From Podarcis muralis (Eukaryota): 64,000 nucleotides of DNA. The notes under the pieces are model-generated. The model was not told the DNA's origin, ran no database searches, and was given only the letters and a program-made list of their open reading frames with translations. The stretch is from positions 20,398,001 through 20,462,000 of the forward strand of contig NC_135667.1 of NCBI RefSeq assembly GCF_964188315.1, given 5' to 3'. Below, piece after piece: positions 39,722-64,000 of the stretch (position 1 is its first letter; every line of letters begins with the position of its first letter). Made by a program: the position numbers and the translations under genes.

Positions 39722-40793
<1,072 letters not shown>

Positions 40794-41299: not shown

Positions 41300-41894
41300 T
41301 GGAGCTGTCCCGAACAGCCTTTCGCTCCCCTAAGCGCTTCCCCCATTCCTGCTTCCCCCTTCGGGAAGTGGGGGCGGCCCTCGCCCTCCCCGGATCTCTC
41401 ACTCCCCGGCCCCACACATCCACTTTCTCCCGCCAGCTCGGCGCACCCCAGGCCTCCCTCCCTCCTACTTGCCATCTTTCCCCCTCGCCCTCCTCCCTGG
41501 CCGACCCTTCTCCCCGCCGCTCCCCACCTTCCTCTCGGCCTCGGCCGCCTTCCTCTCTCCCGGGAGTCCCTCGTGGTTCTGGCGCAGCAGCGAGGCCGAG
41601 GGCTGGCTTCTTCCGCTGCCCGCAAGAGGGAGACACAAGCTCCGCCGCCGCAGCAGCAGCAGGAGGAGGAGCCCCGACGGCGACGCCGCCCCTTCCTAGC
41701 GGAGCCCAAATTTCTTCCCCTTATAAGCGGCAATCGATCTGCCAGAAGGTCATCTTGTTGTTGCTTGCATCCTCGGGATCTTCGCGTTTATCCAAGTTTT
41801 TTTCTTTCTCTCCGCCCCTTTATCTTTCTGTGGATTTACGCGTTTATCCAAGTTTTTTTTCCTTTTTCTCCGCCCGCAGATAGATCTTTTCTGT

Positions 41895-41900
<6 letters not shown>
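41300..41900 (-). promoter_or_regulatory. CpG island: probable POLR2L promoter and non-coding first exon
   Basis: CpG-dense; TATA-like TTATAAG at about 41721; GC boxes; candidate minus-strand donors near 41527 (AAG|gtgggg), 41401 (gtgaga) and 41169 (gtgagg). The exact exon cannot be resolved. Confidence 0.6.
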
Positions 41901-41929
<29 letters not shown>

Positions 41930-41966
41930 CTCTCTCTTTCTTTCTCTCTCTCTCTCTCTCTCTCTC
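41893..41966. repeat. (TTTC)n(CT)n microsatellite
   Basis: Read directly; homopyrimidine tract. Confidence 0.9.
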
Positions 41967-43299
41967 ATCCCGCCTGAGGGAGAATTCTGGAGAACTCGGA
42001 AGTTTGCTTGGTAATTTCATACATTTTGCTTGGCGCAAATATAGGCATTTGCCCCCCAAATTTGGAATTTTTGCGCATGCGGTTTAAATTTTGAGAGTGA
42101 TGCGCATTCTCTCTCCCCGAAATAATGATACCTGGCCTGCCTTACAGGGTTGTTGTAAAGATTGTGGCATATTTATATATATAGTGGGTTGATAACAGCC
42201 ACCATCTCAAACAGGGGTTTATTCCGAGGTAACGGTCCTCGCTTGTGAAATCCTGAGCGCTGCCCCGTTACTTTGCCGTGCCCCCGCTTCCCGCAACTGC
42301 TATTTGACAAACTTTCTGTCTACCACACGGGGGTCTTCATATTGCAAAGCGCACGGCTTCCCCCAAACAATCCTGGGAACTGTAGTTTACCTTTCTCATC
42401 GCTACAATTCCCAGCACCCGTAACAAACTACGGCTCCCAAAATTCTTCTGAAGGAGAGAATGTTCTTTAAACGCCTGTGATGTGAAAGGGTGAATCAGGA
42501 TTGAATGCAGGTGCGCTGGAATTTTGACGTGTGAACGCTGCTGGAGAAAACTCGTGTGCACGGGGAGCACAAAACCCACAATAAACACCCACTTGGAAGC
42601 TGGCAATGTGGAAGGTACAGAAGCGAAGTACTTTACTCCCGAAGTTGCTCCCAGAGTAAACTACTCCTGCACAACAGGACGTGCTCTCGAAAGTGCTTTG
42701 AGCAGAGTTGGAAATCTGAGGCTGTCTGTCACGCGCAGCCTGTGTTGGCGTTTACTTAGAATTGTAAACTTGGGAGGGACACGGAGGGTCATCTAGCTCA
42801 ACCCCCCAGGAATATTTTTGCCCAACGTGGGGATGGAACCCACAACACCCTGAAATCCAGTCTCTGCAAGCATGTTTTAACACCCTCCCTTCCGCGGGGG
42901 CATAATTTGGAAACGTCTCGAAAGCAGAAAAAGAAGTGATTCTCCAATCCCATACAAGTCTACTCCGAAGTAAGTCTCATTGAGTCCAATAGGACTTGCC
43001 GTACTGAGACAGGAATGGAACAGAATCCTGAGCCACACGCTTCTGGTGTTAATGCGGTACAACTGAGTCGCTTTTCATTGTCCTTTTTTGCGGGGGAGGG
43101 GGAAGGTTTAAACAAGAACGGGGGTTCAAATCCGACTGGACGTCTTTGTCTCGAATAGAAACCCGTTTCCCTCCCAGAGCCCCCTGGGCTCCTCCCCACA
43201 GTCTCAAACACGCCCCACATTACTGCCCCCCTTTCTCCCCTCCCATTTCCTTCCCCCTGTCCCGTGCTGGAATTTGCTCCCCCTCCCTTTCCATCCTGC

Positions 43300-43405
43300 A
43301 TCCCATCAGAGGACAAGCAACTTGGAAGAGGTCTAGGTGTCTGGGAGGGGGGCTCCCGCCCCAAATCCGCACTCCCGCCCCAAAGTCTCCTGCCCCGAGA
43401 CCAAG
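43300..43405 (+). other. Probable non-coding first exon of the TSPAN4-like gene (5' end approximate)
   Basis: Strong donor CAAG|gtgagg at 43406 after GC boxes (ctcccgcccc twice); pairs with the acceptor at 45913. Confidence 0.55.
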
Positions 43406-44919
43406 GTGAGGGGCGCACGGAAATGTATTTATAATGGGGGGGGGGAATGTGTCGAACCAGGGATATTTTGAAGGGTATAAAAAGCAGGAGGAGACTCTCT
43501 CTTGGGGGGAGGGGATGATTTCTGCTGTATTGCAATATTTTTCTGGGTCCCATAGAACTGATTCTGCCCACCCCAAAGTCTCTTACTGCAGGATCAGGGG
43601 GGGCAGGGAGAGATTTGGCAGCTGTAGTTAGTTCCTTCCCTCCAGAGGTATTGGTACTTCGTTGAAAGAAAGACGAAAGAAAGAGATCCAAAGGCTCCTT
43701 TCATGTTATTTTGCTTTTCTCCCATTTGTCCCCCCCCCCCCCAACTTTAGGGAAATAATTTAAGGGAGAGCGGGAATGGGTGTGTGCGTTTTAAAAGCCC
43801 ATCACAATTTTATGGGTTATTTACTGTAAGGAATATATTTTCGACCAGTTCAGATCCGGGAATTTAACATTCTTGTTAAATCCAGAAGAGTGGGCGGCGG
43901 GGGGGGGAGGTTTGGATCTTGAATTGGGAAGGTGGGTCTGGAATGTGGGTTATGTTTTATTTCTACAGAATGGGCTTTGCTGAAAAAATGGAAAAGGAAC
44001 TGTGTCCTGAGTGGCAAAAAGGCAAGGAATGAGGGTAAGGGTGGGGTAGCTTTAGCAGGAAAGACCTACAGGGTGGGGAGCGTTTGGCTAAGGAAAACTT
44101 GGCAATTTCATTTTACGTGGTCTGGGGATAAACATTGCCCGTCTTCTTTCTCGCCTTCATGTACCTTCAGCGCACATGATAGAGGGGATGCGTTGCCCTA
44201 CAGGAAATCTGTAATCTGGGCCTGGACAAGGGGACTTTCCCACCCCCTGTTCGTTTGTTGTTTATTTATTTAGCTTTCCCTAAATCAGATAATTTACCTG
44301 CTTTCCCACCACTTCCTTAGCCGCTTCGTCTGAAGGGGATAAATCAACGTTTTATGTATTTCCAGTTGTTTTCCTAAAAAATAAAATTAAACAGTGTTAT
44401 ACTCTTAGTTGTTTTGATACTTAAAACATGGTGCGCTCTCCATTTAAATGGGACAACAAAATAAAATAAAACAGTTCCCAAGCTTGACCGCATTCGTAAT
44501 TTTTATTGCAGTAATTTTCAAGATGAGGTGGGAAACAGGCAAACCTTTAAAGTTAAAAGTTAAAATAAATACGGCATTGTTCTTTTTAAAAAGCAGAGTA
44601 TATGAACACTGGGAACCAAAAATAACTCCCTCCATTTTGATGTCCAGAGGTTACGATTGAAGGTTGTTTGTGTTTGTGGGGAAGATTTTGCCATTCTCTT
44701 GATAGGCCTCTCAATGTTTTTTGGCTGATAGGGAGCTGCTCGGATTCAAACTTCCCTCAGTTCTGCCTGAATACACAGTTCCCTTGCTACTGGCATGATA
44801 TAGAAAGGACATTGCTCCTACGCCCTGCCCCGCAAAAATTCAAAACTGTCTAATCATTGTCCAGGAGCATCTTTATTTCTGACCAGCCTACTGATTCTGC
44901 ACACTTTAGAAGCCATAGT

Positions 44920-45090: not shown

Positions 45091-45924
45091 AAAATTGTAC
45101 AAACCAGTGTGCCAGGCCTGAAGGCCATAGCCACCAACTTGTTTGCTATGATTAAAGAGGGTGGTGAGCATTTAAAATTTTTAGTATGTCCAAGAGACGG
45201 TCTTTAAACTTTATGTAGAATCCACAATACCATTTCTAATGCTAACCAGGCCTTGACCTGCCCACCCTCCCAGTTAGGTCTAAGAATTTTACCTCGGCCT
45301 GTTCGCTTGGGGTCTCCCAACTCTGAAATGCTTGTTTTTGTCTGAGGAAAGGCTTCCTTTCATATAGATTAGCCTAATCACAGTTTGACTGAAGTGGCAC
45401 GGGGGGGGGGGGGGACAGGACGTTTCTCTGAATATTTTCAGTGAGAGAGACTTCATTTTATTTCATATTGTGTGAGTGACACTGAGTAACACCAGCTTAG
45501 TAGTTCTTAATTATAACAGTTGTATTCTGGTACTCCTCTAAGGGGATCAAGGTGGCATACATAGTTCTCCCTCTTAATTTTTTTAATTATTTGAATTTAA
45601 AGGGAATAAAATATGAAAACTCCGAATAAATTGCTTGTGGGATCCAAGCAGACTTTTTCACCTTCCCTCTCCTCGTCCCTCCCTTGCAGTCCCAAGCCCC
45701 ACAGAGCAAATTAGGGGAAGGGGAGGAAGCTGCAGGCGAGATGAGAGGAGGGTGGAATCCTGTTGCATGGACAGCTTTGGGTACATCACTTCAATGTTTT
45801 CATAGAGGACCAGGATTGCCTATGAATTTCTGCCAACTGTATTGTAAATGCTCATGTATGAACGTTCCAGAATTGCAGTACGTATGTTGTTTTCTCCCCC
45901 CCCCCCTTTCCAGACACATCCACC

Positions 45925-45993
45925 ATGGGGGTCAGCCGCGGTTGCTTGCTGTGCGTTAAAGTGAAGATGTTCGTCTTCAACCTCATCTTCTGG
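45925..45993 (+). CDS. TSPAN4-like coding exon 1
   Basis: MGVSRGCLLCVKVKMFVFNLIFW; Kozak caccATGG; exon starts at 45914. Confidence 0.92.
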
Positions 45994-48832
45994 GTGAGTT
46001 GCAGCAGTTCTGTGCACCTCCCCTCAGACAAGGTTGTGTGAATGTCAAAAAATTATTCATTGGATAGCCTTTCCATCTACATCTGACCTGGGGACTCCCA
46101 GGATTAGTGGGAAGGGCTTTTGGGCATGTTATTGATGGCAGGACATTTCTCTTTTAATAAATCAGTGACACAACAAGTTGCCTTACAGGTTTGTAAGGAC
46201 GAACAAGATGGAAAGTGCATTTGTGTGTTAAAACGCTGTCATTTTATAGCAAACCAAAAATCTGCCTGTAGACTGCATGAGAGACCCCGCTCTCCACTAT
46301 TGGCTGAACCGCTTGTGATGTCACAGAAGTTTCATCGGCATTGTAATGGGCAAGGGGTGTGTGTGTCAGCAACAGAATGTTGACAGCTGCTTTATTTGTT
46401 CCAATAAAAAATTGGCACAGGATTGGGAGTCAGGAGGAACTAGGTCTTGTTTGTGGGAAGGGGCTGAACTGAGAGCGTTTGTGGCTGGTGAGTGGAGACT
46501 CAGCCGATGATCTCTTCCACAACAGCATCCTGGATGGAGGGGGGAGGGGGTACCATCAGAGGTGGGGAACCTCAGGTCATGCACATCTCTCCAGACCTCT
46601 CTACTTGACCCTCAGGACTCTGCCCAAGCCACACCCCTCACTAGCCTTGATCTTCACCCTCCTCTAGTGATTCTACATGCTTGGCATGTGTCCCTGAACA
46701 GTGATAATAGCTCTTCTTGGTGTGAGCTTCCCTTCTCTCCCCATAGCTCGGCGGCTGTGGGGTGCTCGGCGTGGGCGTATGGCTGGCTGTGACCCAGGGC
46801 CGCTTTGCCACCTTGTCGTTCTCGTTCCCGTCTCTGTCGGCAGCGGGGCTTTTCATGGCGACTGGAGCCATCATTATGGTTGTGGGCTTCCTCGGATGCC
46901 TGGGGGCGGCCACAGAGCACCGCTGCCTCCTACTGACGGTAAGAGGTATCTCTCTACTGGGTGTTACACTGGGGAGTGTGAGAGACTCGGATGAAATTTG
47001 TGCAGAGGTGTCTAATGAGATCTTTGGTAGGGGAAGGTGCCAGGCAGAGAAATGGGCAACTGACTTAATTCAAAGCAAGAATGCTTAGCCCTGCTTTGGA
47101 GCATAGGCAGAGTGCAGGCATCACTAGGAAGCAGAAAAGTGCATTTCTGAGATGCTGTGGACAAGATGGGGTCCAAGAGGTGCATTTTTCTGTGCATAAA
47201 ACCATTGGGAGCAGTGACATAACTTCGCTTGTGGGCCATCTTGCTTTAGAGATGTTGTTGCTTTCAACTTTTCTTCCTGATTGTGACTTGGCTGCCTGGC
47301 TTGAGCGATGCAGAGCTGTGGGTTCTGCATGTATCTTTCAGCCATGCCAGTGATCTCTGCTTGTGGCGGCAACTTGTGCTACTCATTCAACTGTGGGTGG
47401 CTGGGAGGAAGGAGGGCTTGCAGGGTTAGTTGAACCAGAGGGCCTGATGGCATGTATATGATCCTGTGACTGCAATCAAGTATGGAGCAGAGAGGGGGGG
47501 GTGCGGTAGGAAGTGGGGGCACACTTTGTTCAGAGATGCACACATCTGTAAACACAAAACTGTGTTGTATGAGGCTTTCTCCTTCTCCCCGTAATTGCTG
47601 ATCTGGGTATCTCTCTTCCCTAGTTCTTCCTGGTCCTCTCCACCCTCTTCCTCCTGGAGCTGGTTGGGTTGCTGGTTTTTGTCACCTGCAGGGACAAGGT
47701 AAGGACCTTCCTCACCCCGTATGTAGAATGAGGATGGTGAGATCCAGCTCATTTGGGCAACCTGCAGACTGCAGGCCACGTGTGGCCATCACAGGCCTGC
47801 AGTGCAGCCCACGCCCCTTGCCACTGTTGAGTGCAGCCCTTTGCATTTTAGCAAGAGATGTAAGGGGGCAGTTCTCAAGCTACCACTGTGCTGCCTCCAG
47901 GTCACCAGGGCTTTGTAATGCAAAGCTTGAGACGTCTTTTGAGAACCACACTCTGGTACAAGGTAGTTTACTTAAAGATGCCATTATATTACTGGCAGCT
48001 CCCTGTAGCATCTGTGCTCTTAACAGATGTGTGTGCAGAGAGGAAACTGATTCAAACCATGAGCCTGTCCCGATTCTTGTGGAATGAGAAGAGTCCATTG
48101 TATAGACCTCATGAATCAACATCCTGCACCTCCCCACCACACCCCATATACTTCTTCAAACTTTGGGGTCTGCCAAGCCTGCTGATACCTTCCACTTGTT
48201 AATGGAGGGTGCCATTTTTGGCTACATTAGGATCCACACTCAGACATTGAGTTTGCTTATATCATGTATACGGAACAGTTACAGTGTGGATAAAGTTATT
48301 TGAGTTACATGCTTTCTTAAGATAGCAGGTTTTAATTCGTCCTTGGAATTTGGAATATTGCACCATTTCATTTAGGGTGGTATCTTCCAGAAAGAGGTCT
48401 GGAACCCACGGAATTAGGAAGTGAGGGAAAAGAGAAGGGAAGGTCAAAAAGGAGTGGGGGCTGGACTTCAAACTGTTGGAGTGAACTACTTGGCAAAGTC
48501 TCCACCCCTAACTTGAACATCGGAGGGCTTCCCGATACTCCTCCGGTTTGGAGAAGTTTAGAAGAAAAATGGCAGGGCAGGGTTTCCATCCAACTTTGAA
48601 TAAGCACCATGAGGGCTGAGTTCGCCCCCTCAAACCGAAGTCACAATCTAGTCTCTGCATCACTCTTACCATCACACACACAGGTGCTGCTGGTCCATTG
48701 GGTGTGCTTATTTTGTCCTTTCTCTAGTTTGATAGATATGCCCAGTCCAATCTGAAGGAAGGACTTCAGCTGTATGAGACAGAGGGAAATGTGGGTTTAA
48801 CCAGAGCATGGGACGTTGTGCAGAATGAGGTG

Positions 48833-48889
<57 letters not shown>

Positions 48890-51800
48890 TTTACAGTACT
48901 TCCAAATGGTCAGCAGTCACATCCTAGCAAATTCAGGTTGCTCAACTAAAGCTGATTTTGAGTTCTTGTGCAACAAACCCACTTCCCTAATAGATTGGGA
49001 TATTTTTGCAAGAAAGAGGTGGGGGAAAGGTGGTAGGATGTGTGGGATGGTGCTTGCATCATGCGTTGCCATCTAATCTACCCACAAACAGGTAATCTGG
49101 AAGTGAATTTAGAGAGCTAAGAAACAGCCAGGGAGATTTCCCCCACTTTAAGCATCCTCATCCCATTTCGGAAGAGCACCCCCACCCCCCCCGTGTGAGA
49201 CTGATTTCTCCCCTTGCTTCCCAGTTTCGCTGCTGTGGGGTGCAGAACTACACAGACTGGTTTGAGGTCCGCAACAGAACGTGGGTTCCGGAGTCCTGCT
49301 GCTTGCAGCAAAGTGACATCTGCCAAGTGGACAGCGCCAGCTGGTGGAAGGAGGTGAGACGGCAGCAGGAGTTGCCCTCAAGGAAGAGAGAATCCCCTAC
49401 GGCTGTGGGTTCCAAATTAGGTTGTCCGCTGAAGCCCCCTCCAGAAATGCTTGTGTCCTGAGCAAGTGGCAAATGGCTAAATGCAGGGTCCGATTACAAG
49501 ACTGGCCTGCACTAAAACCCTCCAGCAGACCTCTCTCTCGGAGCTGTTGAGGTAGAGACGGCCTTTGACACTCTGTCCTGCGACAAAAGTATCAGCTTCT
49601 GGCTTTTGACTGTAGATTCTCATCTCCCTCTCTGACCATACAACACACTCAAATTTACTTTTATGCTGTTCTAACTTCATGGCTTATCCCAGTGAATCCT
49701 GAGAATTGTCACTCAAGGAGGTGCTGAGACAGAGGTCTCAGAGGTCTGAGACTCTCTGCTTTTAACATTTTGTGCATTAAATGTTGAGCTGTCTCAGGAA
49801 GGAGGGAATGATGAAACCGGAGGGGGAAGGGGTTCCTAGTCTTTGGTGGCCTACGAACCAGCACATGACTTTTATGAAGCCCCCCAAAATTTCAAGACTA
49901 GCTACTCTGTGTGTCTTCTTGCCGTTAGCAATATGCAATAAGACAGAGGGCCTTTGTGGATTGCTTTTCCTGAGGAAAGCGGCCTAGCCCAGTCCTCTTC
50001 TGATGCTTCAGCCCAACTGAGTTTTGGTGACGGCTGCAGCCTTTGATTTGCTTCATTAATGCTGCTGCTCAAAGCTGTCGTGTTAATTTAACTCATCTTT
50101 TTAACTGTGAGATTTTCTTGCTCTTTTTTTTTGAGCAGAATAGCATATCTGCTTTATGATTTTTAAAATGTCAGGTTGTTTACACTTAAAAGTCACTAAT
50201 GAGAAGCAGGCTATAAATATATTGGGGGGAAACAACAACACCTAGTCCGGGCTGTAGTATGGATACATCCAATTTAATTGGGTTATCTTCCTCCCTTCCC
50301 CAATATATTTTACTCTCAAAAGACTTACATAAAAGGAGAGTGGCAGTCAGCCTATTAGCGTGACCAGTTACCAGCCTGGGTTGCTGCAGTTTTAATGATA
50401 TAGGCAAATTAGAACAGGTTCAGAAAAGATTACTGAAGATGGCCAGCTGTATGTAAAATAGTCCTGGGAAGATAGGTTGGATGAACCGGGTATGTTGATT
50501 CTGTTTAGACTGAGAGGGGTGTGTGTGTAATAGCCCTCTTCAAGGAGAAGTACTGTCACATAAAGCAGAGGCAGGGAACTTCAGGGTCAAATGCAGCCTG
50601 CCAGGCCTATCTGTCTGTTGAAATTTCCCTCAGCCTCATCCCTCACTGGTGCTGCTTCGTATCTAGAGTGGTTTTGCCTGACTGTAGTACGTCCTTGAAC
50701 TCTCCTAATGCCTGTTGCTTGTCTGGATGGAGGACAGAGGGGTGACTGTGCAGAAACCAGTCTAGTTACTGTACAGTGGTAAAATTCACTTTCTCTCCTT
50801 CACCCATCCTAGCCTGAAGCTCCCAGATAGTTGCCAAGAAGAAAATGCAGCCCTCCTGCTGGCAAAGGTTCCTGTTGCAGAAGAAAGGCTTGTTCACTTC
50901 AGCCCAGTGGATAAGAAGGGGGGACACTTTAAGTTATAGGAGCTGATTTGGGCTGAATATTCAGTTTAATACTCAACCCAAATATTCAACTGATTGATGG
51001 CAAGCGCAGTTCCACAATGGAACAAATGACCCAGAGTTCCTACTAGAAACAGCTTGCATGTTAAATAAATGTTAGATTAAATGGAAGATGACATTTTTTG
51101 GGTGCACAGGAGTTTGATCAACCCAGATCAGAGGCACTGCCTCTTCTTGCCAGTGCGCTCTGGTGACCATGTTTGTTTTGTGCTCTATTCCCCTAAAGCC
51201 CTGTTACGAGAAGGTGAAACGCTGGCTAGGAGAGAACATCTCAGCCATGGGCATCTTTGCCGCCTGCATCATTGTTGTCCAGGTGAGCAGGAAGGAACAG
51301 CCATGGGAGGGGACACGCCTGACCTGAGCAAGTGCTGAGGCTGCTCTGGTGCAACACCACACGTGCCACCCATTACCATCAGCACAAGAACGGAAGGTGG
51401 GGTTGTCTGCAGGGGACCACAGAATAGGATGAAGCTATTCTTTCCAACACTGGCCATGGTCCCACAGGGAGTAAATAAATAAATTGGAAGCAACACGTAA
51501 ACTGGTGCAATCTGTGCTGTCAAAAGGCATCCCCCTTTAGGAGAGAAGACTGTCCAGGAGGATGGTTTCCTGACTGGGAAAAGACCACATAGAAGCTGCC
51601 CCTGCCACCTCCAGTTTGTACAAAATGGGCCAAGAAGCAAGGGACTGGGAAGCCAGAAGCCAGGGCATTGGCTCATTTGTAGAGTCTACGCAGTTAGCCA
51701 ATATGGGGCCTTTTAGAAGTTGTGGACTAAAACTCCCATCAGCCGCAGGCAGCACGGCCAGAGGCCACAGGTGATGCGAGTTGTAGTCCAAGATATCTAG

Positions 51801-52273
51801 AGCAGTGTTTCCCAACCTTGTGCCTCCAGATGTTTTTGGCCTACAACTCCCATCATCCCTGACTAGCAAGACCAGTGGCAAGGGATGATGGGAATTGTAG
51901 GCCAAAAACAGCTGGAGGCACAAGGTTGGGAAACACTGATCTAGAGGGCAACCCATTGGCTACACCTGGTCTACACTGACAGGCAGCAGCTCTCCAGCCT
52001 TTTGGATAGCCTTGCTTGGAGATCCTGGGTGGTTGGACCTGAGACCTTACGCTCAGCCTTCCTACATTTTAGAGGCAGCGGCAAGGAGGGGAGTTCAGGA
52101 GGCAGCATCTTAATTCCAATATTGTAAGGAAGTGACATGCTGGGCTGGGACTCTTCCACCCCCACTTTTTTGTTGTCTGTCTGACCTCCTTTATGTCTCT
52201 CCAGGTCTTGGGCATTGTTTTCTCCATGCTGATGTACTGCCAGGTGCGGCGGGCGGAGAAATACTATGACTGA
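45925..52273 (+). CDS. Tetraspanin of the TSPAN4/TSPAN9/CD53 family (TSPAN4-like), complete 239 aa
   Basis: join: 45925-45993, 46747-46938, 47624-47698, 48728-48829, 49225-49353, 51199-51282, 52205-52273 = 720 nt, all phase 0, GT-AG. Four TM segments; EC2 with CCG, PESCC, C and PC (6 Cys); sequons NYT, NRT, NIS. Closest recalled protein is TSPAN4, at about 60% by hand alignment. Confidence 0.93.
46747..46938 (+). CDS. TSPAN4-like coding exon 2
   Basis: LGGCGVLGVGVWLAVTQGRFATLSFSFPSLSAAGLFMATGAIIMVVGFLGCLGAATEHRCLLLT. Confidence 0.94.
47624..47698 (+). CDS. TSPAN4-like coding exon 3
   Basis: FFLVLSTLFLLELVGLLVFVTCRDK. Confidence 0.92.
48728..48829 (+). CDS. TSPAN4-like coding exon 4
   Basis: FDRYAQSNLKEGLQLYETEGNVGLTRAWDVVQNE. 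Confidence 0.94.
48835..48889. repeat. (CT)n(CA)n compound microsatellite
   Basis: Starts immediately after the gtgagt donor of TSPAN4-like exon 4. Confidence 0.9.
49225..49353 (+). CDS. TSPAN4-like coding exon 5
   Basis: FRCCGVQNYTDWFEVRNRTWVPESCCLQQSDICQVDSASWWKE. Confidence 0.94.
50400..50620 (+). mobile_element. Degenerate CR1 ORF2 C-terminal fragment (approximate)
   Basis: aaattagaacaggttcagaaaagattactgaagatg... resembles the CR1 LERVQRRATKM region. Confidence 0.5.
51199..51282 (+). CDS. TSPAN4-like coding exon 6
   Basis: PCYEKVKRWLGENISAMGIFAACIIVVQ. Confidence 0.93.
51803..51938. mobile_element. Near-perfect palindromic hAT MITE (136 bp)
   Basis: cagtgtttcccaaccttgtgcctccag...ctggaggcacaaggttgggaaacactg; perfect 8-bp TSD atctagag. 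Confidence 0.92.
52205..52273 (+). CDS. TSPAN4-like coding exon 7 (last)
   Basis: VLGIVFSMLMYCQVRRAEKYYD* (TGA 52271-52273). Confidence 0.93.
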   Translation, partial: VLGIVFSMLMYCQVRRAEKYYD

Positions 52274-52681
52274 GCCCCATCCGAGTACATTCTTCATGCC
52301 TCCATCTTTGTGGCTCAGAAGCAGCACCAAGGGGATTCCTAGCTCCTTTAGGGCACCCACTTTCCCTTGCTTCCTCTCCCTTTCTTCCTTATTTGAGAGC
52401 CTGAGGCATTTTGCTAAAGACCATTTCTGCCATTAGGCTCATGCCATATCTGCTGGGAGAGGAAGATACTCCCCCCTTCCTTCTGAAGGACCTCGTTTTT
52501 TGCTAAATCTTTTATTGTGTGTACCTCTTTTCAGGCCTAGAGTGGGATTATATTTCCTTTCACTTTAGCCTACATAATCCCCCATCCCAACCCTATATTT
52601 TACATCGTGATCCTGACGCCTACCCACCCTTTGCCCTTCAATCTTGTTGCTTTTGTATATAACAGAACTATACCAAGCACC

Positions 52682-52687
52682 AATAAA
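52682..52687 (+). terminator. Probable polyA signal of the TSPAN4-like gene
   Basis: First AATAAA after the stop, about 410 nt downstream. Confidence 0.65.
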
Positions 52688-52713
52688 GCAATTAATCCCT
52701 TTCAGTCACTCTA

Positions 52714-52719: not shown

Positions 52720-54049
52720 TCCTGATGCACATTTGTATTTTGGGTTAGGGGTGAAGAGTGACAGCTGCTCAGAGTTCTTCATGCTAACTCTCCATCAGCC
52801 CAAATGGCAAGTGATTTTACGAACGAGGCGATCTCCTCTTTGAGGGAGGGGGGATATAAACAGAAGAGGGAAAATATATAATGGGGCATGTTTCTCCCCC
52901 TCCTGTTTTGTTCCGCTCACAGGTCTGGATGAAGGTAGCTGGTGGTACAGGAAGAGGTCTTCCACAAAGGCCTGCCATCCCACCACCTTTCCGGAGATGT
53001 AACCCCCCCCCCCTTTCTAACTCACTTCCTGTCAATCAGACAATACAGCAAAAGAGTTGGTAAAAGACAGCTTTTTTTTTTAATTATTATTATTATTGGC
53101 TTGTAGGTTTGCAGGAAGGAGAAAAATAAATACATCCTCTCCCTTCCAATTCACCAATCATCTTTGGACAAAAATAGAGGGCCAGGGCCACAAAGCGCCC
53201 TTGAAAAATCTGATACAAAAGTATTATGCTGGGGCAGCGAGGGGGTGGGTGGAAGATAAACGGAGGGGTGTAGGTGACTCCTAGAGCCGCTTTTATATCC
53301 CGCCTGCCATGAGAGCAGCCTCACCTTTGCACCACCCCTCCCCCCAAGAGGGAAAAAAAGGACCCTGAAGTACCGCTCCTGGAAATTGGGAGAGAGCTAT
53401 GCATGGGGGAAAGTGGGGGAGGGGGAGGTGGGGCAAGCACAAAACGACAGGATTCCTTCCCCCACCACTGCTGCCCTGCTCTACAAAGGGTCAGTTAGGT
53501 CAAGTGTATAGACAAACCCAGCTTATGTGCAAAGGAGATTTTAAGACACTTATTTTGGGAGGAAGAAAGCAAAAATAGAGGGGGGGGGGGCTTGGGGAAC
53601 TGACGAAGGGAACCTACCGCAGCCAGATGCTGGGGTAGATTGGAAGGGTTGATGGTGGTGGCAAGAACAGATATGGGGGTGTATTTGTCGTCAGTATCCG
53701 TCCGTAGTGTTCCATTTCCCTCTTCTATGTGTCAGGGACCCCTCTCAGAAAAACAACAACTCCTCAATTAGATAGGATAGAAGGGGAAAGTGGGACAGAA
53801 TTTCTGGCGTGGAGAGGAGACAATTGGACCCTCCACACCAGCTGTAGTGTAGAGATTGAGGTCATCACTTTAATTTAAAGCTTGTGGGAGCTCAGGAAGG
53901 GGAGGGTGGGAATAGAGAGGGGAGGGAATTCGAGCTGTATGGCTTGAGGGGAGCTTCCAACCCTGTCCACCGATTTGGATGTGGGGGGGTGGGGAGAAAT
54001 AAAAGGGCACAAACAGAGGAAGGGGCAGGACAAAGGGCCACCAGATCCA

Positions 54050-54193
54050 TTAGTATTTCCGCTGTAGTTTCTGGAAGTCGCTCGTGTTGAGGCGCGGCCG
54101 AGGCAGGTCCCCAAACATCTCAGTGCCATCTGACACCCTCAGCACCAGAGCTCGCATGCTGGCGGCAATTTTCTCCAGGTCGGGGGACGAATG
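54050..54193 (-). CDS. AKT1S1: AKT1S1 last coding exon
   Basis: [47 protein letters not shown]. Confidence 0.95.
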
Positions 54194-57100
54194 CTGTATT
54201 GAGGAGCAAGGGAGAGGGAGCCAGGTGGAGAAGTCTTCGTTATTTGTTTTAAATAATTAAGTAAGTGAGCAAAACTAGGTTGCTCCCGTCCTACAGCTAA
54301 ATTCAGATCTCTACCTAGAAGAGCTTTTCAACAGAAGCTCCCACTGGAACTCTGGAGGTTCTGCCACCCAACTTCCAAAGTCTATGCATTCTACTCTAAG
54401 ACACACAACTCCTAATTGAGACTCTGTGTATTTCTTTTCTATGTTGTCAATGGTTATAACACAGAACAATATAAAGGCATCAGGGCAGGGCGTGACAAAA
54501 TTAAGCACCATTAAAAAAGTAACAGGTCAATCAAAGATGCTTTAAGCCACCATATAGGCCTGGTGGTAGAAGAAGATATTCCAGAAACACCTGAAAGTTA
54601 ATGGGTTTTTTTGGGGGGGGGTCTCCCAAATCTCCGCTGGAAGTGTGTTCCATAGCATGGGACTGGGGACACTAAATGGCCAACTCCTAGTGGAAGCCAT
54701 TTGGCCTTTTTTGTAACCCAAGATACACACCCTTCCTTGAGATCCTTCACCTACTTTGCTTTCTGGCTCTCACTAGGTGCAAGCAGCTCCAGCACCCAGG
54801 ATGCCCCCTAAGTCTCCCTCTTCTCCATCAAACCGGTCTCAGGCATTATCCTTTGCTCAAGCACCATTAAAAAAAACACCATTGCTGATTTTCGCATAAA
54901 GTACACATCACACAATTGTCTGCCAAAACCATGAGGAGGGTGAAAGGGCTGTGGAGGACTTAACAGGCCTCACCTTGCTCACTTCCGACTTCTCTCCCGT
55001 TGGCCACACACATTCAAACCCTATCTTTGCAATCGTAAGAACTTGATTTTTAAAGAAAGCAAAGCAAAGCTGAGACTCGCCTGGTGAATTAACGCAAACG
55101 ACATTCGTTTCTGTGCATTCAAGCTGCAGCCACAGGATATGCACAGCCCCAGCCACTTACAAAAGCTACAATGACACCTGTAGGAACTGGGGGGGTTGAA
55201 CTTTTTGCAAATGTGGCCCCAGCATCTTTCCAGCAGCGACTCTACCACCCTGCTGGAAGATGTGTTTTTTCTGGAGCTTACCCACCAGCCGAACCCTACA
55301 CACCTGTCTTAAAAAGGAAGGGGGAGAGCTCTGGAGTGTATCCCCCCCCCCAAAAAAAATATGTCTGCCTTTCCAATACACACATTCTCAGTTCCTACCC
55401 ACCTTGCTGTTCTCTTCATCAGAGGATCGCATCTCTTGCCGTTGCTCCTTGAAGCCCCAGATAGGCACTGAGACAGGCAAGGACTTGGCATACTGATGGC
55501 TGAGGGGTGGAGGGGCTGTCTGGCCAGGAGCCTCCTCACTTAGACTCCCATCTGGTAGAGAGAAATGGGGGGAGAAAAATGGGTCAGAAGGACGGAAGGA
55601 AATAAAAAGAAATGAACCATCAGAAAGCATCCTCCTCCCTAGCTACAGGAGGGAAGGGATAACATCACTCTCGCAGGAACTATGCTCCCATTTAGTTCGA
55701 ATTCCTAAAACTCACTAAAGCAGTGTTTCTCAAACTTGGGTCCTCAGCTGTTGTTGGACTACAACTCCCATAATCCCTGACCACTGGTCCTGCTAGCTGG
55801 GGATGATGGGAGTTGTAGTCCAACAACAGCTAAGGACCCAACACTGCAATGAAAAGGTGGTATGTTTTTTACAGATGAGTGATGTTGTTTTGCAGCATCC
55901 CATGAAACTTCCAGCTTTTGCTGACATAGCATGCACCTGAGAAGGAAGGTTCAGTTTTGGCCGGGAGAGGCCTGAAGAGAGACTCCGCTACAGGAAGCCA
56001 GACATTTCAAGCAAATGTCTCCTTCCTACTGTATAAAGTCCCTGACATGCCTCCCTTATCTTTTGTAAATTTAGCAGTAACAAAAGAGTGTCAGGCTCCC
56101 TTCTGGAAGTGTTGAACAAAGATAAAATCTCCTAAACGTTACTCCTTTCCTTTGCCCACCAGTTCTTGCAATTACTAGATCAAGTAGTTCCCAATGGCCT
56201 GAGGCTCTTGTCAGAACAGCCCAACATATTTGCTGATCTCTTTTCCCTACCTCACCTGGACAGCAAAATCAGATGCATCTCTAGAAGCTGTTTTGCAAGG
56301 TTTTTTAGACAGACTCTTCCCGGCTTGCCTTACAGTTTGTAAGATGAACATGGAGCTTCCATGTTCCAAGGCAGTATCTCCAAGTCTGTTGCCGGGTGCT
56401 ACATCTTAAGAGGTATGTGATATTTGGAGCCAAGTTATCAGGAGGTGGTCTGCCCACTTGCAAGCTTTCCCCGAGACACCTGCTTTTACTTTGCTGGAGG
56501 TAGAACAAAAGGACTATGGGGACATTTGGCTGGGAAAGGCAATTCGTTTGTCATTAGGATGCACATAACTTCTGCTGCCACCGCCCTTCAAAACCCTGGT
56601 AGAATAAAAAAACTTAATGAATGTATGAAGCAACAGAGCCCTACTCCTTGTACCTATTGTTCACATTTATTGTATCCTTCCTCTGAGCAGCTCAAAACAG
56701 CAAGGGTGGAGATTGGGGGGGTCCCCTCTTTTATCCTCTTAGACCACCTTGTAAGGTAGGCTAGCCTGGCCTAAGGTCACCCAGTGAGCTTCAGGGCCAA
56801 GCAGGGATTAAAACCCAAGTTTCTCTGGTACACTCTCACCACTTTGCTCCTCTGACTGCTGATCCTCTCCCACAAGGAAGATCCTGACAAACAGAGGGGA
56901 TGTGGGAAAAGCTGCTCCCTCAAGATACCTATAAAGTCTTGAATGACTCCAGGCCTAATGCAATCAGCAGGGACGTGGGTGGCGCTGTGGGTTAAACCAC
57001 AGAGCCTAGGACTTGCTGATCAGAAGGTCAGTGGTTTGAATCCCCGTGACGGGGTGAGCTCCCGTTGCTCGGTCCCTGCTCCTGCCAACCTAGCAGTACG

Positions 57101-60100
57101 AAAGCACGTCCAAGTGCAAGTAGATAAATAGGTACCGCTCCGGCGGGAAAGTAAATGGCATTTCCATGCGCTGCTCTGGTTCGCCAGAAGCGGCTTAGTC
57201 CTGCTGGCCACATGACCTGGAAGTTGAACACTGGCTCCCTCAGCCAGTAAAGCGAGATGATCGCCGGAACCCTAGAGTCGGCCACGGCTGGTCCTAATGG
57301 TCAGGGGTCCCTTTACCTTTACCTAATGCAATCAGCAGTATCTTGGCTTCTTCCACATTTGCAGTCAACATAGTATGTGCATTGTGGGAAGCTGGCAGAG
57401 GGAGTGAAGAGACTAAAAAAAAAAAGTGGGAGATTCAGCTGCCGCTCACCGTCAGTGCTCTCCAGATCAGAGTCGAAGAAAGGCTCATATTCCTGGCTTG
57501 GAGAATCCTCGTCCATCACAAACAAACCTGGAAGTGAATTAAAAACAAAACAGAATTAGATCTCGCTGAGTTGTATGCACAGGGACCCCCTATTTGAACA
57601 TGAGAAGTAGCCGTTCTGGGACTGCTTATCGAGCGATCAACACAGTCACATCCGGAGAACCAATCTCCCCCCCCCCCCCCAATTATACTGGGATCCCTCA
57701 CTCACTAGTTAGGTACAGCTATATTTTGCTTCAAGTTCCATCTCTCAACTGAGAGATGCAAGTGGCAACTGTAAGCAAAGCGTCTTCCCCTTCCTGTGGC
57801 AACTTTAAAAACTAAGAAGAACGCATTTGATCAGGTCAATGGCTCCTCTAACCCAGCATTCTGCTCCCACGAGTGGCCAACCAGATGCCTTCTGGGAAAC
57901 CTACAAGCACAGGAGAAGACTCCCACATGGTGGTTTCCAGCAACTGGTTTTCAGAAGCATTATCATCTCCAGCTGTGGAGGCAGAGAATAGACAGCATGG
58001 TTCATAGCCATTGAGAGCCCTCTCCTCCATGAATTTGTACAATCCTCTATTATGTTTTTTCTTTTTTTATTAAATGTTACCCAAAAAAATGAATAGAAAA
58101 AAAGAAATAGAAACAATACATAACCATACATAAAAACATTTTGTCTACACAATTTTCCAGAATGCAGGCTAGAAGACAAAAGATAAAATAAACAAGAAAA
58201 AGAATGAAGAGAAAAAATATTTTTCATAATCAATTATTCCAAATTCATACTTCAAACATCACAATATTTAAATCCTAGTTAAAATATTATAAAAGACTTC
58301 CACCGCATTCACCACACGTCTCTTGGTTATCTAATTCACCTTTACATCTGTTCTTCAGTCACTCCCTTTCCTTAAATTCTTTCGGAGTCCATCTAATCTT
58401 TGTATTCTCAGTATTCTTCACAAGGTTAGTCTAAGCACAACCAAACTTTCATGTTTGATCCCTGTTTGTGTAAATATTCATTTAAGCATTCCCATTGTTT
58501 CTGTACCATAGTTTTAGATTTATGCCTTATTATATCCGTCAATTTTGCTAATTCCAGATACTCACATAGTTTACTTAACCATTCCCTTTTTGTTAGGATG
58601 TTATTTCCTTTCCAGTAACTGGCCACCAGTGTTCTCGCTGCTGTTGTTGCATATAGGAATATGTTAATTTTATCTTTGGGGATATCCTTACTCAAAATTC
58701 CTAATAAGTATGCTTCTGCCCTTTTGTTACATGAAACCTTTATTAATTTTTTAATTTCTTCATGGATTATTTCCCAGAATTTTTTGATCTCTGAACATGT
58801 CCACCACATATGGTTTAGAGTGCCCTTCGTCTTATTGCATCTCCAACATTTATTACTAATCGATCTATTCATTTTTGCTAGTCTGTCTATTTTAAAGCCA
58901 CCTGGGTCGGTAGCCAATTTTAACATCATATACCTGCGTGGAACTCCTCACCAGATGAGGTGGTGATTTTTTATTTTTAAAAAGTATTTCTGATTTAAGA
59001 ACGTACCAGAGGGAAAGGGTGGGAGAGGGGTTGCTTTTTTCAGTGCCAAGAGGTACAGATTAAAGGACAAAGCATTTGTGTTCAGTCTCTGAAAAATACC
59101 GCATTTCTCATTATTTCCACATCAAAATATAAGCTAAAACGGGAGCTGGGACAGAGCCTGGAAACCTGACAGCCAGTTTTGCTACATCTCCTTAAGCGGC
59201 ACAAAAAATAGTATTTTTCTGCGATAACATCTGATCACAATGTACGTCAGCAGCCCAGTTTTCTGGGACGGCAACTGGACCAGCACATAGTTAAAACGAT
59301 GGGATTTACTATTACAGGATGTTAATAGTGGCACCAAACTTTAACGTCTTTAAAAGGGGCTTAGACAAATTCATGGAGGATAAAGCTATCAATGGGTATT
59401 GGCAGGTAGTGTGTTTTTGGTTTTTAATTTTTTTATCGAAACTTTTCAGCATACAATACAAAAACAAACTATTCTAAATAGTAAAAAAGAAAAAGTGAAG
59501 GGGAGTGGGGTGGGGTGGGAATACAAAGCCCTCTATCAGGGGTAGATCTTAACCCTTGTCTCCCACAAAAGCGGGTGGACCCTCCCAGCTTTCACCTGGG
59601 AGCATCCCATTCGTCTCCCAGGCTCCCACCCTGGGAGATCTTCCCTTCCCTGTCTCTCACACAGGGTTTTTTCCTGTTTTCAAACCACCCTCCCACTAAA
59701 GTGGTCAATTTCCGCAAGTTCTATCACCATAAACACCACTTTGAAACACTTTTGCTTCTAGGTTGTGAGCTTGAGGCTATATTGCAACTCTTTAGGGGAC
59801 AGATTTAAAGAGTCGAAAATTATACTTTCAAGTATTGCTAAAATGGTGAAGAGCTCCTCTCCCCTTTGGGAAGGCATGGTGATGTGCTGTGTGCCTGGAT
59901 ATGGATTCTGATCTGGAAAAAAAGCATTATCCAAAGTTGAGTTTCTGAGAAAGGGGCATCTCCTATTCAGCAGGCAAAAGCAGCACCCTACAAATACTTG
60001 TAGAGCTTGAGACCCAACTACTGCGTGCTAGGTGTCAGGAAACATCCAACAGGAGTGAAGAAAGTGTTACTTTGGAAGAAGCAGATTCAATGAGAAAGCC

Positions 60101-61463: not shown

Positions 61464-62019
61464 CCTACAGGCAAACAAAAAAGAGAAGGGGTACACGCGT
61501 TAATGTTGTGGAAATAGCAGCTGGGCAAACGTTAAGGGCTTTAGTTGACTGAAATATTAAATTGGCTTAAGTAATATGGATGAAACAGTACTTGAGAGGC
61601 AACCCAAAAACCTTCCCTTTTGACCACACGCATGGACCGTATTTGAAGAGAATTGCATGCAATTCCTCTTCTAAAGCAGAACCTGCTACCCACTATTTCT
61701 GTAAGCGTCTGTATCGAAACAATAATCATTCTTATTAAAGAGCACTGCTGCCTAATCTATCAGGGGCAAACTTTTGCCATTGGGAAGGAAGGCAAACTAG
61801 CACATTTAAAGCAGGAAGGGTCAAGAAGCAACGTGTCCAGGGTCCCCAGAAAAGGGCAAGCAGAAAAGCTACCCCTACCCAGACCCTGGGGCTCTCTTTT
61901 TTGGGGGGTGGGTAATAGACAGTGGGGTCCTTTCTAACGGGTCGCAGTGAGGGATGGAAACAGGCAGCCAGGACTCCTGGGTTCTGGTCCAGCAATACGG
62001 CAAAAGGCACGTTCCTCCC

Positions 62020-63620: not shown

Positions 63621-63977
63621 GGATAAGTTAGTGGGGAGAAGCGGAATCTGACCCCTTTCCTGGGTGGAAGTTCCTAAAAGGCCCTTGCTCTGAGTTGTCT
63701 TCATAAAGTCGCCCTTCCTCTTACTTTAGTGTTATTGAGGGGGCCATAAAGTATGTTCCAGCAGCCTTAGTTTGAGGCAGGGCTTCTCTTCCCCAGCTGC
63801 ATTCTACAGAGGTGGGTGGGGATGCCAGTGAACCTGCTTCTTGTGCTGACCTCCTGTTTTTTTCCTGTCCTCCTCCAGGTTGCATTTGAGAAGGATGGTG
63901 TCTATTTACACACCAGCGCAAAGCGTCATCCTGACCAGGATTCCCTGATTCCGGGGGTTATCCGCATAATCGAGAAG
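63408..63977 (+). CDS. TBC1D17: TBC1 domain family member 17, first two coding exons (continues right of the window)
   Basis: join 63408-63428 (MELGGCR|gtgagg) + 63879-63977 (VAFEKDGVYLHTSAKRHPDQDSLIPGVIRIIEK|gttggt). Matches the recalled TBC1D17 N-terminus and sits head-to-head with AKT1S1. Confidence 0.9.
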
Positions 63978-64000
63978 GTTGGTTGAGGTGGGATACGGGT

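What the first reader, a model, noticed from the sequence alone, without database searches (positions are those of the whole stretch)
45914..52273. Intact TSPAN4-like tetraspanin in a 19q13.33-type neighbourhood: candidate fourth TSPAN4/TSPAN9/CD53 ohnolog missing in human
Seen: a complete 7-coding-exon, 239-aa tetraspanin ORF with canonical splice sites, a 6-Cys EC2 and three sequons, lying between PRMT1 and AKT1S1. Established: human TSPAN4 (11p15.5), TSPAN9 (12p13, beside the PRMT1 paralog PRMT8) and CD53 (1p13) occupy three arms of the 1p13/11p15/12p/19q13 vertebrate whole-genome-duplication paralogon. I know of no family member at human 19q13.33. By hand alignment to human TSPAN4 as I recall it, identity is only about 60%, lowest in TM3 and the tail (KYYD versus TYCA), which is low for an amniote ortholog of this gene. 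TM1 has an unusual KVK where the family has KYL/KYM. Inference: this is a retained paralog lost in mammals. TSPAN4 drives migrasome formation, so a second divergent copy could have its own membrane-microdomain role.
Basis: partly seen in the sequence, partly recalled or inferred. Interest (0 to 1): 0.82.

Follow-up and report, generated by a model that had tools for sequence, protein, structure and literature searches.

The report
Known TSPAN4-like (tspan4b) gene in lizard
The window holds an intact, expressed tetraspanin gene that is a genuine old sister copy of TSPAN4 missing from mammals, but it is already annotated ("tetraspanin-4-like", fish tspan4b) and was described as the "TSPAN4-like" lineage in 2010.

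Summary
Seven phase-0 coding exons (45925-52273, + strand) with AG/GT borders encode a 239-aa tetraspanin. It is 100% identical to RefSeq "tetraspanin-4-like" of Podarcis muralis.

RNA-seq covers only the predicted exons and shows four of the six junctions. dN/dS among squamates is 0.04-0.05.

It is not the TSPAN4 ortholog. In rooted ML trees it falls in a separate clade B: chimaera, coelacanth, ray-finned fish tspan4b, amphibians, turtles, alligator, tuatara and squamates. True TSPAN4 (clade A) occurs from sharks to mammals, and Paroedura, Pogona and Erythrolamprus carry both genes. No mammal or bird sequence falls in clade B. A tetrapod-only duplication is rejected (AU p = 5.5e-5).

Neighbours are 19q13.33-type genes: GYS1, PRMT1, AKT1S1 and TBC1D17. 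The AKT1S1 neighbour is conserved in Pogona, Rhineura, a turtle and a caecilian.

The gene is not new. Huang et al. [quoted passage not shown]

What this work adds is evidence for a whole-genome-duplication origin: the split predates jawed vertebrates, the gene sits on the paralogous arm, and a POLR2L copy was duplicated with it. The scan had already noted that POLR2L pair on this window (s1-180253).

Function is uncharacterised. Interest is low to moderate.

The parts
45914..45993 (+). First coding exon of the TSPAN4-like gene. The acceptor AG is at 45912-45913, the ATG at 45925, and the exon encodes 23 codons.
   Evidence: identical to RefSeq protein P0384
46747..46938 (+). Coding exon 2 (64 codons): end of TM1, EC1, TM2 and the inner loop.
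   Evidence: RNA-seq depth and the 46938>47624 junction
47624..47698 (+). Coding exon 3 (25 codons): TM3.
   Evidence: junctions 46938>47624 and 47698>48728
48728..48829 (+). Coding exon 4 (34 codons): first part of EC2.
   Evidence: RNA-seq depth. The 4-5 junction was not reported because reads are cut at the (CT)n(CA)n repeat at 48826-48899.
49225..49353 (+). Coding exon 5 (43 codons): CCG motif, two sequons, and five of the six EC2 cysteines (C149-C179).
   Evidence: junction 49353>51199
51199..51282 (+). Coding exon 6 (28 codons): sixth EC2 cysteine (C191), third sequon, start of TM4.
   Evidence: junctions 49353>51199 and 51282>52205
52205..52689 (+). Last exon: 22 codons plus the stop (ends at 52273), then the 3'UTR up to AATAAA at 52684-52689.
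   Evidence: stranded RNA-seq depth to at least 52650
43136..44033 (+). Candidate upstream, mostly non-coding 5' exons (43136-43404 and 43968-44033). They match the predicted N-terminal extensions of Lacerta agilis isoform X1 and the Podarcis lilfordi model.
   Evidence: tblastn; not checked with reads
41300..41750 (.). G+C-rich stretch (GC 0.52 in the 40001-42000 bin; CG-rich on reading the sequence) between POLR2L and the TSPAN4-like gene. It is a probable shared bidirectional promoter region.
   Evidence: collinear with Rhineura L001; promoter role is inferred
39722..40691 (-). POLR2L copy (67 aa) with two coding exons, 40597-40691 and 39722-39830. It lies head-to-head with the tetraspanin gene.
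   Evidence: identical protein in Pogona L002 and Callorhinchus L004
26874..35725 (+). PRMT1 coding exons, the upstream neighbour.
   Evidence: motif scan; collinear with turtle PRMT exons; Pfam PRMT families in Pogona and turtle loci
54026..61496 (-). AKT1S1 (PRAS40), the downstream neighbour.
   Evidence: PF22911 at E = 1.3e-30; FVMDED motif; PRAS genes in Rhineura, Pogona, turtle and caecilian loci
63864..63980 (+). Exon of TBC1D17; matches the start of the annotated turtle RabGAP-TBC gene.
   Evidence: tblastx to the turtle locus, 84.6% identity, and the turtle annotation

Best explanation
This is the wall-lizard (Podarcis) ortholog of the vertebrate 'TSPAN4-like' gene, called tspan4b in fish.

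Shown. It is an intact gene, spliced as predicted, transcribed from the + strand and under strong purifying selection. It encodes a standard four-helix tetraspanin with a three-disulfide EC2 and three N-glycosylation sequons. It belongs to a clade separate from true TSPAN4. That clade is present from chimaera to reptiles and is absent from the mammals and birds among the database hits.

Inferred mechanism. Like its closest relatives (TSPAN4, TSPAN9, CD53), it should sit in the plasma membrane and be palmitoylated on juxtamembrane cysteines (C7, C10, C83, C229 are candidates). It should organise tetraspanin-enriched microdomains through lateral contacts made by the variable part of EC2. I put about 40% on it sharing TSPAN4's ability to concentrate on curved retraction fibres and migrasomes. 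Its divergent TM3, N-terminus and tail (40-50% identity to TSPAN4) suggest different partners or trafficking. A G+C-rich stretch shared with the housekeeping gene POLR2L predicts broad expression.

Inferred origin. I put about 70% on it being the fourth 2R ohnolog of the TSPAN4/TSPAN9/CD53 family. On this view it lies on the chromosome arm corresponding to human 19q13.33, was duplicated together with POLR2L, and was later lost in the mammalian stem.
For: Gene model and identity.

Expression: four runs cover only the predicted exons. Junctions 46938>47624, 47698>48728, 49353>51199 and 51282>52205 are seen. First mates lie on the minus strand, as expected for a + strand RNA.

Selection: dN/dS is 0.040 against Rhineura and 0.045 against Pogona. 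All 7 exonic variants seen in the reads are synonymous.

Fold: AlphaFold mean pLDDT is 81. The best PDB match is human CD53 6WVG, TM 0.73-0.74. CD53 is also the best sequence match, E = 1.2e-34.

Phylogeny: clade B has support 99/94 and clade A 100/97. Both contain cartilaginous fish, ray-finned fish and tetrapods. Bichir and gar each have both genes.

Both genes in one species: Paroedura P0156 and P0276; Pogona P0155 and P0332; Erythrolamprus P0387 and P0324; Gopherus evgoodei P0040 and P0401.

Synteny: PRMT1-POLR2L-B-AKT1S1 in Pogona; PRMT1-B-AKT1S1-TBC1D17 in a turtle; B-AKT1S1 in a caecilian and in Rhineura. GYS1 lies at the window's left end.

Block duplication: POLR2L also lies head-to-head with clade-A TSPAN4 in Sceloporus. 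In Callorhinchus the order is POLR2L, B, then an alpha-adaptin gene.

Literature: the lineage is named TSPAN4-like.
Against: Rooted with amphioxus and a hemichordate, B is sister to TSPAN4 (97/87). This is also what a later single-gene duplication of TSPAN4 would give, which was the reading of Huang et al. 2010.

The order of A, B and TSPAN9 is not resolved (AU p = 0.17 and 0.10). CD53 could not be added to the tree.

In gar and medaka, no AKT1S1 or POLR2L motif was found within 10 kb of tspan4b. Deep conservation of the neighbourhood is therefore shown only for tetrapods, plus POLR2L and AP2A in the chimaera.

The human map positions used for the paralogon argument come from my own knowledge, not from a tool. 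No functional data exist for this gene. A clade-A TSPAN4 in this particular genome was not shown directly.
Confidence: 0.7

Rival explanations
1. The gene is real and is the TSPAN4-like/tspan4b lineage. However, it arose by a small-scale or segmental duplication of a POLR2L-TSPAN4 block before jawed vertebrates radiated, not by whole-genome duplication. The copy happened to land in, or was later moved to, the 19q13.33-type arm.
For: B is sister to TSPAN4 to the exclusion of TSPAN9 in the rooted tree (97/87). Huang et al. 2010 class it as an independent duplicate. Ray-finned fish loci do not show the tetrapod neighbours within 10 kb.
Against: The location is on an arm whose genes are paralogous to those on the TSPAN4 and TSPAN9 arms: PRMT1/PRMT8, AP2A1/AP2A2. 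The PRMT8-TSPAN9 block is described in PMC5608299. The adaptin neighbour in the chimaera mirrors TSPAN4-CHID1-AP2A2. A topology of ((A,B),TSPAN9) is equally what two rounds of WGD predict if CD53 pairs with TSPAN9. The branching order is not resolved in any case.
Confidence: 0.25
2. The gene is simply this lizard's TSPAN4 ortholog. It moved, with POLR2L, into a new neighbourhood and then evolved fast.
For: NCBI calls the ortholog 'tetraspanin-4' in Zootoca, Pogona and Protobothrops.
Against: Holding tetrapod A and tetrapod B together costs 60.6 log-likelihood units (AU p = 5.5e-5). Other squamates have a separate, highly conserved TSPAN4 on another chromosome. In Sceloporus that gene has its own POLR2L. 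The AKT1S1 neighbour is shared with a turtle and a caecilian.
Confidence: 0.02
3. The reading frame is a decaying or untranscribed relic that only looks intact.
For: None found.
Against: Spliced, stranded RNA-seq in four runs from three studies. dN/dS is 0.04-0.05, and only synonymous variants were seen. All tetraspanin hallmark residues are kept.
Confidence: 0.01

Closest known systems
TSPAN4-like lineage of Huang et al. 2010 (PMC2965184); zebrafish/medaka tspan4b; RefSeq 'tetraspanin-4-like'
   Same: Same gene lineage. The window protein equals RefSeq XP_028607609. Medaka 'Tetraspanin 4b', and cyprinid proteins that share their N- and C-terminal strings with the paper's zebrafish entry, fall in the same clade. 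The exon plan is conserved from chimaera to lizard.
   Different: Tetrapod members have K-V/I-x in TM1 where fish members keep KYL. Fish proteins are 232 aa with shorter EC2 exons (96 and 114 nt). The paper calls the lineage an independent duplicate, whereas the synteny found here favours an ohnolog.
TSPAN4 (human 11p15.5; fish tspan4a), the migrasome tetraspanin
   Same: Closest paralog by identity, about 60-61%. Same size, same seven-exon phase-0 structure, same 6-Cys EC2, and head-to-head with a POLR2L gene. Frog isoforms of B even share TSPAN4's alternative N-terminal extension.
   Different: Separate clade since before jawed vertebrates. Different neighbours (PRMT1/AKT1S1). EC2 is one residue shorter. 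The tail is AEKYYD rather than ADTYCA. TM3 and the tail are only 40-50% identical. B evolves faster than TSPAN4: sauropsid A terminal branches are about 0.005-0.07, while B branches are 0.02-0.5.
CD53 (PDB 6WVG)
   Same: Best solved-structure match by both sequence and fold. It belongs to the same ancestral tetraspanin lineage according to Huang et al. 2010.
   Different: CD53 has lost two EC2 cysteines and is 219 aa (from the paper and my own knowledge). Identity is only about 31% over the structural alignment.
TSPAN9 (human 12p13.33, near PRMT8)
   Same: Same subfamily, 51-53% identity. It lies in a block next to the PRMT1 paralog PRMT8 (PMC5608299), mirroring PRMT1 next to the window gene.
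   Different: Clearly separate clade.

Membership tests
Tetraspanin superfamily (Pfam PF00335) | Full-length match to the family profile above the curated cut-off | tested here: met
   182.5 bits against a cut-off of 32.1, profile positions 1-225 of 225
Tetraspanin superfamily (Pfam PF00335) | Four transmembrane helices, and an EC2 with a CCG motif plus further conserved cysteines (6-Cys-a pattern: CCG..DW..PxxCC..C..C) | tested here: met
   C149, C150, G151, D157, W158, P168, C171, C172, C179 and C191 are invariant across 41 relatives. Helices are at 2-39, 55-79, 82-108 and 191-238 in the model.
Tetraspanin superfamily (Pfam PF00335) | Tetraspanin fold | tested here: met
   Foldseek best hits are CD53, TSPAN15, CD9 and CD81; TM 0.73-0.74 to 6WVG
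TSPAN4 proper (ortholog of human TSPAN4 / fish tspan4a) | Groups with TSPAN4 of other amniotes in a gene tree | tested here: not met
   Falls in clade B (99/94). A clade of tetrapod A plus tetrapod B is rejected, AU p = 5.5e-5.
TSPAN4 proper (ortholog of human TSPAN4 / fish tspan4a) | It is the only TSPAN4-type gene of the genome | tested here: inconclusive
   Not testable for this genome itself. In Paroedura, Pogona and Erythrolamprus (squamates) and the tortoise Gopherus evgoodei, both genes exist.
TSPAN4-like / tspan4b lineage | Groups with the named members (zebrafish NP_001076276-type, Xenopus AAI67361, medaka Tetraspanin 4b) | tested here: met
TSPAN4-like / tspan4b lineage | Conserved neighbourhood among tetrapod members | tested here: met
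   AKT1S1 lies immediately downstream on the opposite strand in the window, Rhineura, Pogona, Macrochelys and Rhinatrema. PRMT1 lies upstream in Pogona and Macrochelys.
2R ohnolog of TSPAN4/TSPAN9/CD53 | The duplication predates the split of cartilaginous and bony vertebrates | tested here: met
   Chimaera P0185 falls in clade B, and shark and ray tspan4a fall in clade A
2R ohnolog of TSPAN4/TSPAN9/CD53 | Lies on a chromosome segment paralogous to those of the other members, with neighbours duplicated alongside | tested here: inconclusive
   Neighbours are GYS1, PRMT1, AKT1S1 and TBC1D17. A POLR2L copy lies beside both A and B, and an adaptin gene lies beside B in the chimaera. The human map positions and paralog pairs are from my own knowledge and PMC5608299, and no statistical paralogon test was run.
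2R ohnolog of TSPAN4/TSPAN9/CD53 | Tree topology compatible with two rounds of duplication, including CD53 | not tested
The order of A, B and TSPAN9 is unresolved.

The most novel reading that the evidence does not exclude
The TSPAN4 lineage would be the only tetraspanin lineage to have kept all four 2R copies: TSPAN4, TSPAN9, CD53 and TSPAN4-like. Huang et al. 2010 report at most three for any lineage. The head-to-head POLR2L-TSPAN4 pair would have been duplicated as a unit, so squamates and chimaeras still carry two POLR2L genes of about 500 million years' standing. Mammals would have lost the whole 19q13.33-arm pair.
Probability: 0.6. Interest if true: 0.4.

Novelty: already known. Interest (0 to 1): 0.25.

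Why it matters
For annotation, it shows that 'tetraspanin-4' and 'tetraspanin-4-like' labels in reptile, amphibian and fish genomes cover two different genes of pre-gnathostome age. Zootoca, Pogona and Protobothrops B genes are labelled plain 'tetraspanin-4'. This can mislead orthology-based transfer of TSPAN4 (migrasome) biology.

For evolution, the synteny found here argues that the 2010 classification of this lineage as a small-scale duplicate should be revisited in favour of a fourth ohnolog.

For cell biology, non-mammalian models used for migrasome work have a second TSPAN4-type gene that nobody has tested. Zebrafish tspan4a mutants are one example, and the second gene could mask phenotypes there.

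None of this is surprising to a specialist in tetraspanin evolution.

Tried and rejected
1. Searching with the whole spliced protein was not possible by reference. I searched with exon 2 alone, then used a Naja partial model and later the exact RefSeq protein P0384 found in a cluster listing.

2. Extending exons into flanking open frame to pass the length filter did not give long enough pieces, so I dropped it.

3. Look-ups of clade-A isoforms of Pogona and Paroedura found no record. Bichir and Sceloporus A genes are too long to return DNA.

4. Neighbours of gar, bichir and medaka tspan4b carry no Pfam label. They show no AKT1S1 or POLR2L motif, so fish synteny stays open.

5. Rhineura showed no POLR2L hit in its 10-kb flank. 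By the collinearity (window 41204 at L001 1449) the expected exon-1 position falls about 700-800 bp inside the flank, so absence there is possible but was not followed up.

6. P0122 was tested as a possible CD53 and is not one. CD53 is therefore absent from the trees.

7. A search for the frog and TSPAN4 N-terminal extension exon in the window found nothing.

8. I left the third large protein search unused. The remaining questions were a bird clade-B gene and a Podarcis clade-A gene hidden inside 90% clusters. That search was unlikely to settle either.


Full report
**1. What is in the sequence**

Reading 45500-52700 and splicing by hand gives seven coding exons on the + strand:
- 45925-45993
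- 46747-46938
- 47624-47698
- 48728-48829
- 49225-49353
- 51199-51282
- 52205-52273

All exons are phase 0, and every internal border is AG...GT. The product is 239 aa.

It matches Pfam Tetraspanin over the whole profile (E = 1.2e-53).

The model is letter-for-letter identical to P0384, RefSeq 'tetraspanin-4-like [Podarcis muralis]'. A Podarcis lilfordi entry also matches. The window therefore comes from a Podarcis wall lizard, and the gene is already annotated.

**2. Is it a working gene?**

Two raw stranded RNA-seq runs and two assembled RNA runs of the same species label were laid on 46700-52650. Depth is confined to the predicted exons and the 3'UTR.

Four junctions are seen exactly where predicted: 46938>47624, 47698>48728, 49353>51199 and 51282>52205. 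The exon 4-5 junction is hidden because reads are cut at the (CT)n(CA)n repeat that begins just after the exon 4 donor. The exon 1-2 junction lay outside the stretch.

First mates lie on the minus strand, as expected for a + strand transcript in a standard stranded library. All seven exonic differences between reads and window are synonymous.

Coding sequences were extracted from the Rhineura, Pogona and Macrochelys loci. dN/dS is 0.040 and 0.045 within squamates, and 0.14-0.22 against the turtle.

An AlphaFold model built on 41 relatives has mean pLDDT 81, with the expected helices. It is closest to human CD53 (6WVG, TM 0.73-0.74). CD53 is also the best solved relative by sequence.

**3. Which tetraspanin is it?**

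A search with exon 2 against 1.8 billion cluster representatives led to a Naja model. From there I reached named relatives.

The nearest are 'tetraspanin-4-like' proteins:
- squamates: 87-96% identity for the complete 239-241-aa proteins (shorter or insert-bearing predicted models score 82-87%)
- tuatara: 83%
- a turtle: 69%
- amphibians: 64-72%

Mammalian TSPAN4 reaches only about 60%.

A second search used bichir tspan4a. It showed that a much more conserved 'tetraspanin-4' exists in squamates (Paroedura, Pogona, Anolis, Sceloporus, Tiliqua, Ahaetulla, Erythrolamprus, Heteronotia), birds, turtles, frogs, ray-finned fish (tspan4a) and sharks and rays (tspan4a).

An ML tree of 61 proteins was rooted with amphioxus and hemichordate TSPAN4-like proteins. 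It gives three clades:
- **TSPAN9 plus a lamprey gene.**
- **Clade A** (true TSPAN4, support 100/97).
- **Clade B** (support 99/94), which holds the window protein.

Clade B contains Callorhinchus 'tetraspanin-4', coelacanth, bichir, gar, teleosts (including medaka 'Tetraspanin 4b'), amphibians, turtle plus alligator, tuatara and squamates. An earlier 84-protein tree agrees.

No mammal or bird falls in clade B. In one search, B-type proteins from amphibians to turtles scored 167-249 bits and the list ran down to 148 bits. A mammalian or avian B-type protein would therefore have been listed.

Forcing tetrapod A and tetrapod B into one clade costs 60.6 log-likelihood units (AU p = 5.5e-5). A lineage-specific duplication or a relocated ortholog is thus excluded.

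Several species demonstrably carry both genes on different chromosomes:
- Paroedura: P0156 and P0276
- Pogona: P0155 and P0332
- Erythrolamprus: P0387 and P0324
- Gopherus evgoodei: P0040 and P0401

**4. The neighbourhood**

From left to right, the window carries:
- GYS1 on the minus strand (Pfam Glycogen_syn)
- PRMT1 on +
- POLR2L on -
- the tetraspanin gene on +
- AKT1S1 on -
- an exon of TBC1D17 on +

The same order is seen elsewhere:
- Pogona: PRMT1-POLR2L-B-AKT1S1
- Macrochelys: PRMT1-B-AKT1S1-TBC1D17, where only a 19-residue trace of POLR2L remains
- Rhineura and the caecilian Rhinatrema: B-AKT1S1

In Callorhinchus the order is POLR2L(-), B(+), then an alpha-adaptin gene. The POLR2L protein there is identical to the window's.

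In Sceloporus, the clade-A TSPAN4 also has a 67-aa POLR2L immediately upstream on the opposite strand. Squamates therefore have two POLR2L-TSPAN4 pairs.

From my own knowledge of the human map, GYS1, PRMT1, AP2A1, AKT1S1 and TBC1D17 are all at 19q13.33, with AP2A1 between PRMT1 and AKT1S1. POLR2L-TSPAN4-CHID1-AP2A2 are at 11p15.5. PMC5608299 describes prmt8 beside a tspan9 block, and prmt1 near cpt1c-tsks-ap2a-fuz-med25 in alligator and human.

**5. Origin**

The A/B split predates the divergence of cartilaginous and bony vertebrates. The rooted tree puts A and B together (97/87). The alternatives A+TSPAN9 and B+TSPAN9 are not rejected (AU p = 0.17 and 0.10). The three lineages therefore arose close together in time.

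Three points make a two-round whole-genome-duplication origin the most economical reading, at about 70%:
- B lies on a chromosome arm whose genes are paralogs of those beside TSPAN4 and TSPAN9.
- A POLR2L copy was duplicated with it.
- An adaptin gene follows it in the chimaera, as AP2A2 follows TSPAN4 in human.

An early segmental duplication remains possible, at about 25%. CD53 could not be fetched, so the full four-member topology was not tested.

**6. What is already known**

Huang et al. 2010 (BMC Evol Biol 10:306, PMC2965184) list a 'TSPAN4-like' lineage. [quoted passage not shown]

Their supplement prints the zebrafish (NP_001076276) and Xenopus (AAI67361) members. The N- and C-terminal strings of those entries are found in my clade-B cyprinid and Xenopus proteins.

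Zebrafish has the official symbol tspan4b (ENSDARG00000070391). In the searchable literature it appears only in gene lists. Migrasome work uses tspan4a.

The lineage and its absence from mammals are therefore known. Its function is not. The same paper reports that no tetraspanin lineage keeps more than three ohnologs, so reclassifying this gene as an ohnolog would be a modest correction.

**7. How it most likely works**

Shown: a glycosylatable four-helix membrane protein with a disulfide-locked EC2, strongly constrained and expressed.

Inferred from the family: it is palmitoylated at juxtamembrane cysteines and assembles tetraspanin-enriched microdomains with partner proteins chosen by the variable EC2 region.

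Against TSPAN4, TM1 and EC1 are 80-89% identical. TM2, TM3, TM4, the inner loop and both tails are 31-57% identical. This points to conserved packing of the first helix pair, with different lateral or cytoplasmic contacts. Whether it shares TSPAN4's curvature sensing and migrasome role is untested; my estimate is about 40%.

**8. Verdict**

The core inference, a retained old paralog missing from mammals, is right, and the ohnolog idea is reasonable.

The gene is already annotated, named in fish and described in the literature, so its novelty is low. The earlier scan note s1-180253 on the POLR2L pair, made on this same window, gave the lead to the block-duplication evidence. I checked that claim here.

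Noticed in passing
window 39722-40691 (-); Sceloporus A locus; L002:3135-5033; L004:101-1360; L003:8854-8910: Squamates carry two POLR2L genes. One lies head-to-head with true TSPAN4 (Sceloporus). The other lies head-to-head with the TSPAN4-like gene (window, Pogona). The B-linked POLR2L protein is identical in Podarcis, Pogona and the chimaera Callorhinchus. In the turtle Macrochelys only a 19-residue trace remains.
   Followed up: partly
P0171-P0174 residues 1-78 versus P0178, P0206 and P0280 residues 1-90; no match in the window: Long isoforms of frog clade-B genes start with an extension (MQTSSSDDPS ... YLDLSFLLLLELKK). It is clearly homologous to the alternative N-terminal extension of true TSPAN4 (MRRSSTDESTY ... 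YLDLSFIFLLELKR) in bichir, frogs and primates. This alternative first coding exon therefore predates the A/B split. No trace of it was found anywhere in the 64-kb window.
   Followed up: partly
window 1939-7545 (-): Exons of a glycogen synthase gene (Pfam Glycogen_syn, E = 7e-46 and 6e-21), presumably GYS1. It is another 19q13.33-type gene, upstream of and divergent from PRMT1.
   Followed up: no
window 51675-52072 (intron 6 of the tetraspanin gene): An interspersed repeat containing an inverted pair (about 51796-51945). It draws very high RNA depth on both strands, with many loose ends and strand-switching joints. These are reads from other copies in the genome, not from this gene.
   Followed up: no
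window 48836-48890: A (CT)n(CA)n microsatellite starts a few bases after the exon 4 donor. It hides the exon 4-5 junction in short-read mapping.
   Followed up: no
window 63864-63980 (+): An exon of a RabGAP-TBC gene (TBC1D17 by position). It is 84.6% identical at the protein level to the turtle gene that follows AKT1S1.
   Followed up: no
window 15256-15780 (+): Weak zf-RVT match (E = 0.006, below Pfam's cut-off). It is probably a retroelement remnant between GYS1 and PRMT1.
   Followed up: no
Database names: Naming of clade-B proteins is inconsistent. They appear as 'tetraspanin-4' (Zootoca, Pogona, Protobothrops, Bombina, several teleosts), 'tetraspanin-4-like', 'Tetraspanin-9' (Varanus, Oryzias melastigma, Clarias) and 'TSN9 protein' (Atractosteus). 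Orthology transfer from these labels is unsafe.
   Followed up: yes
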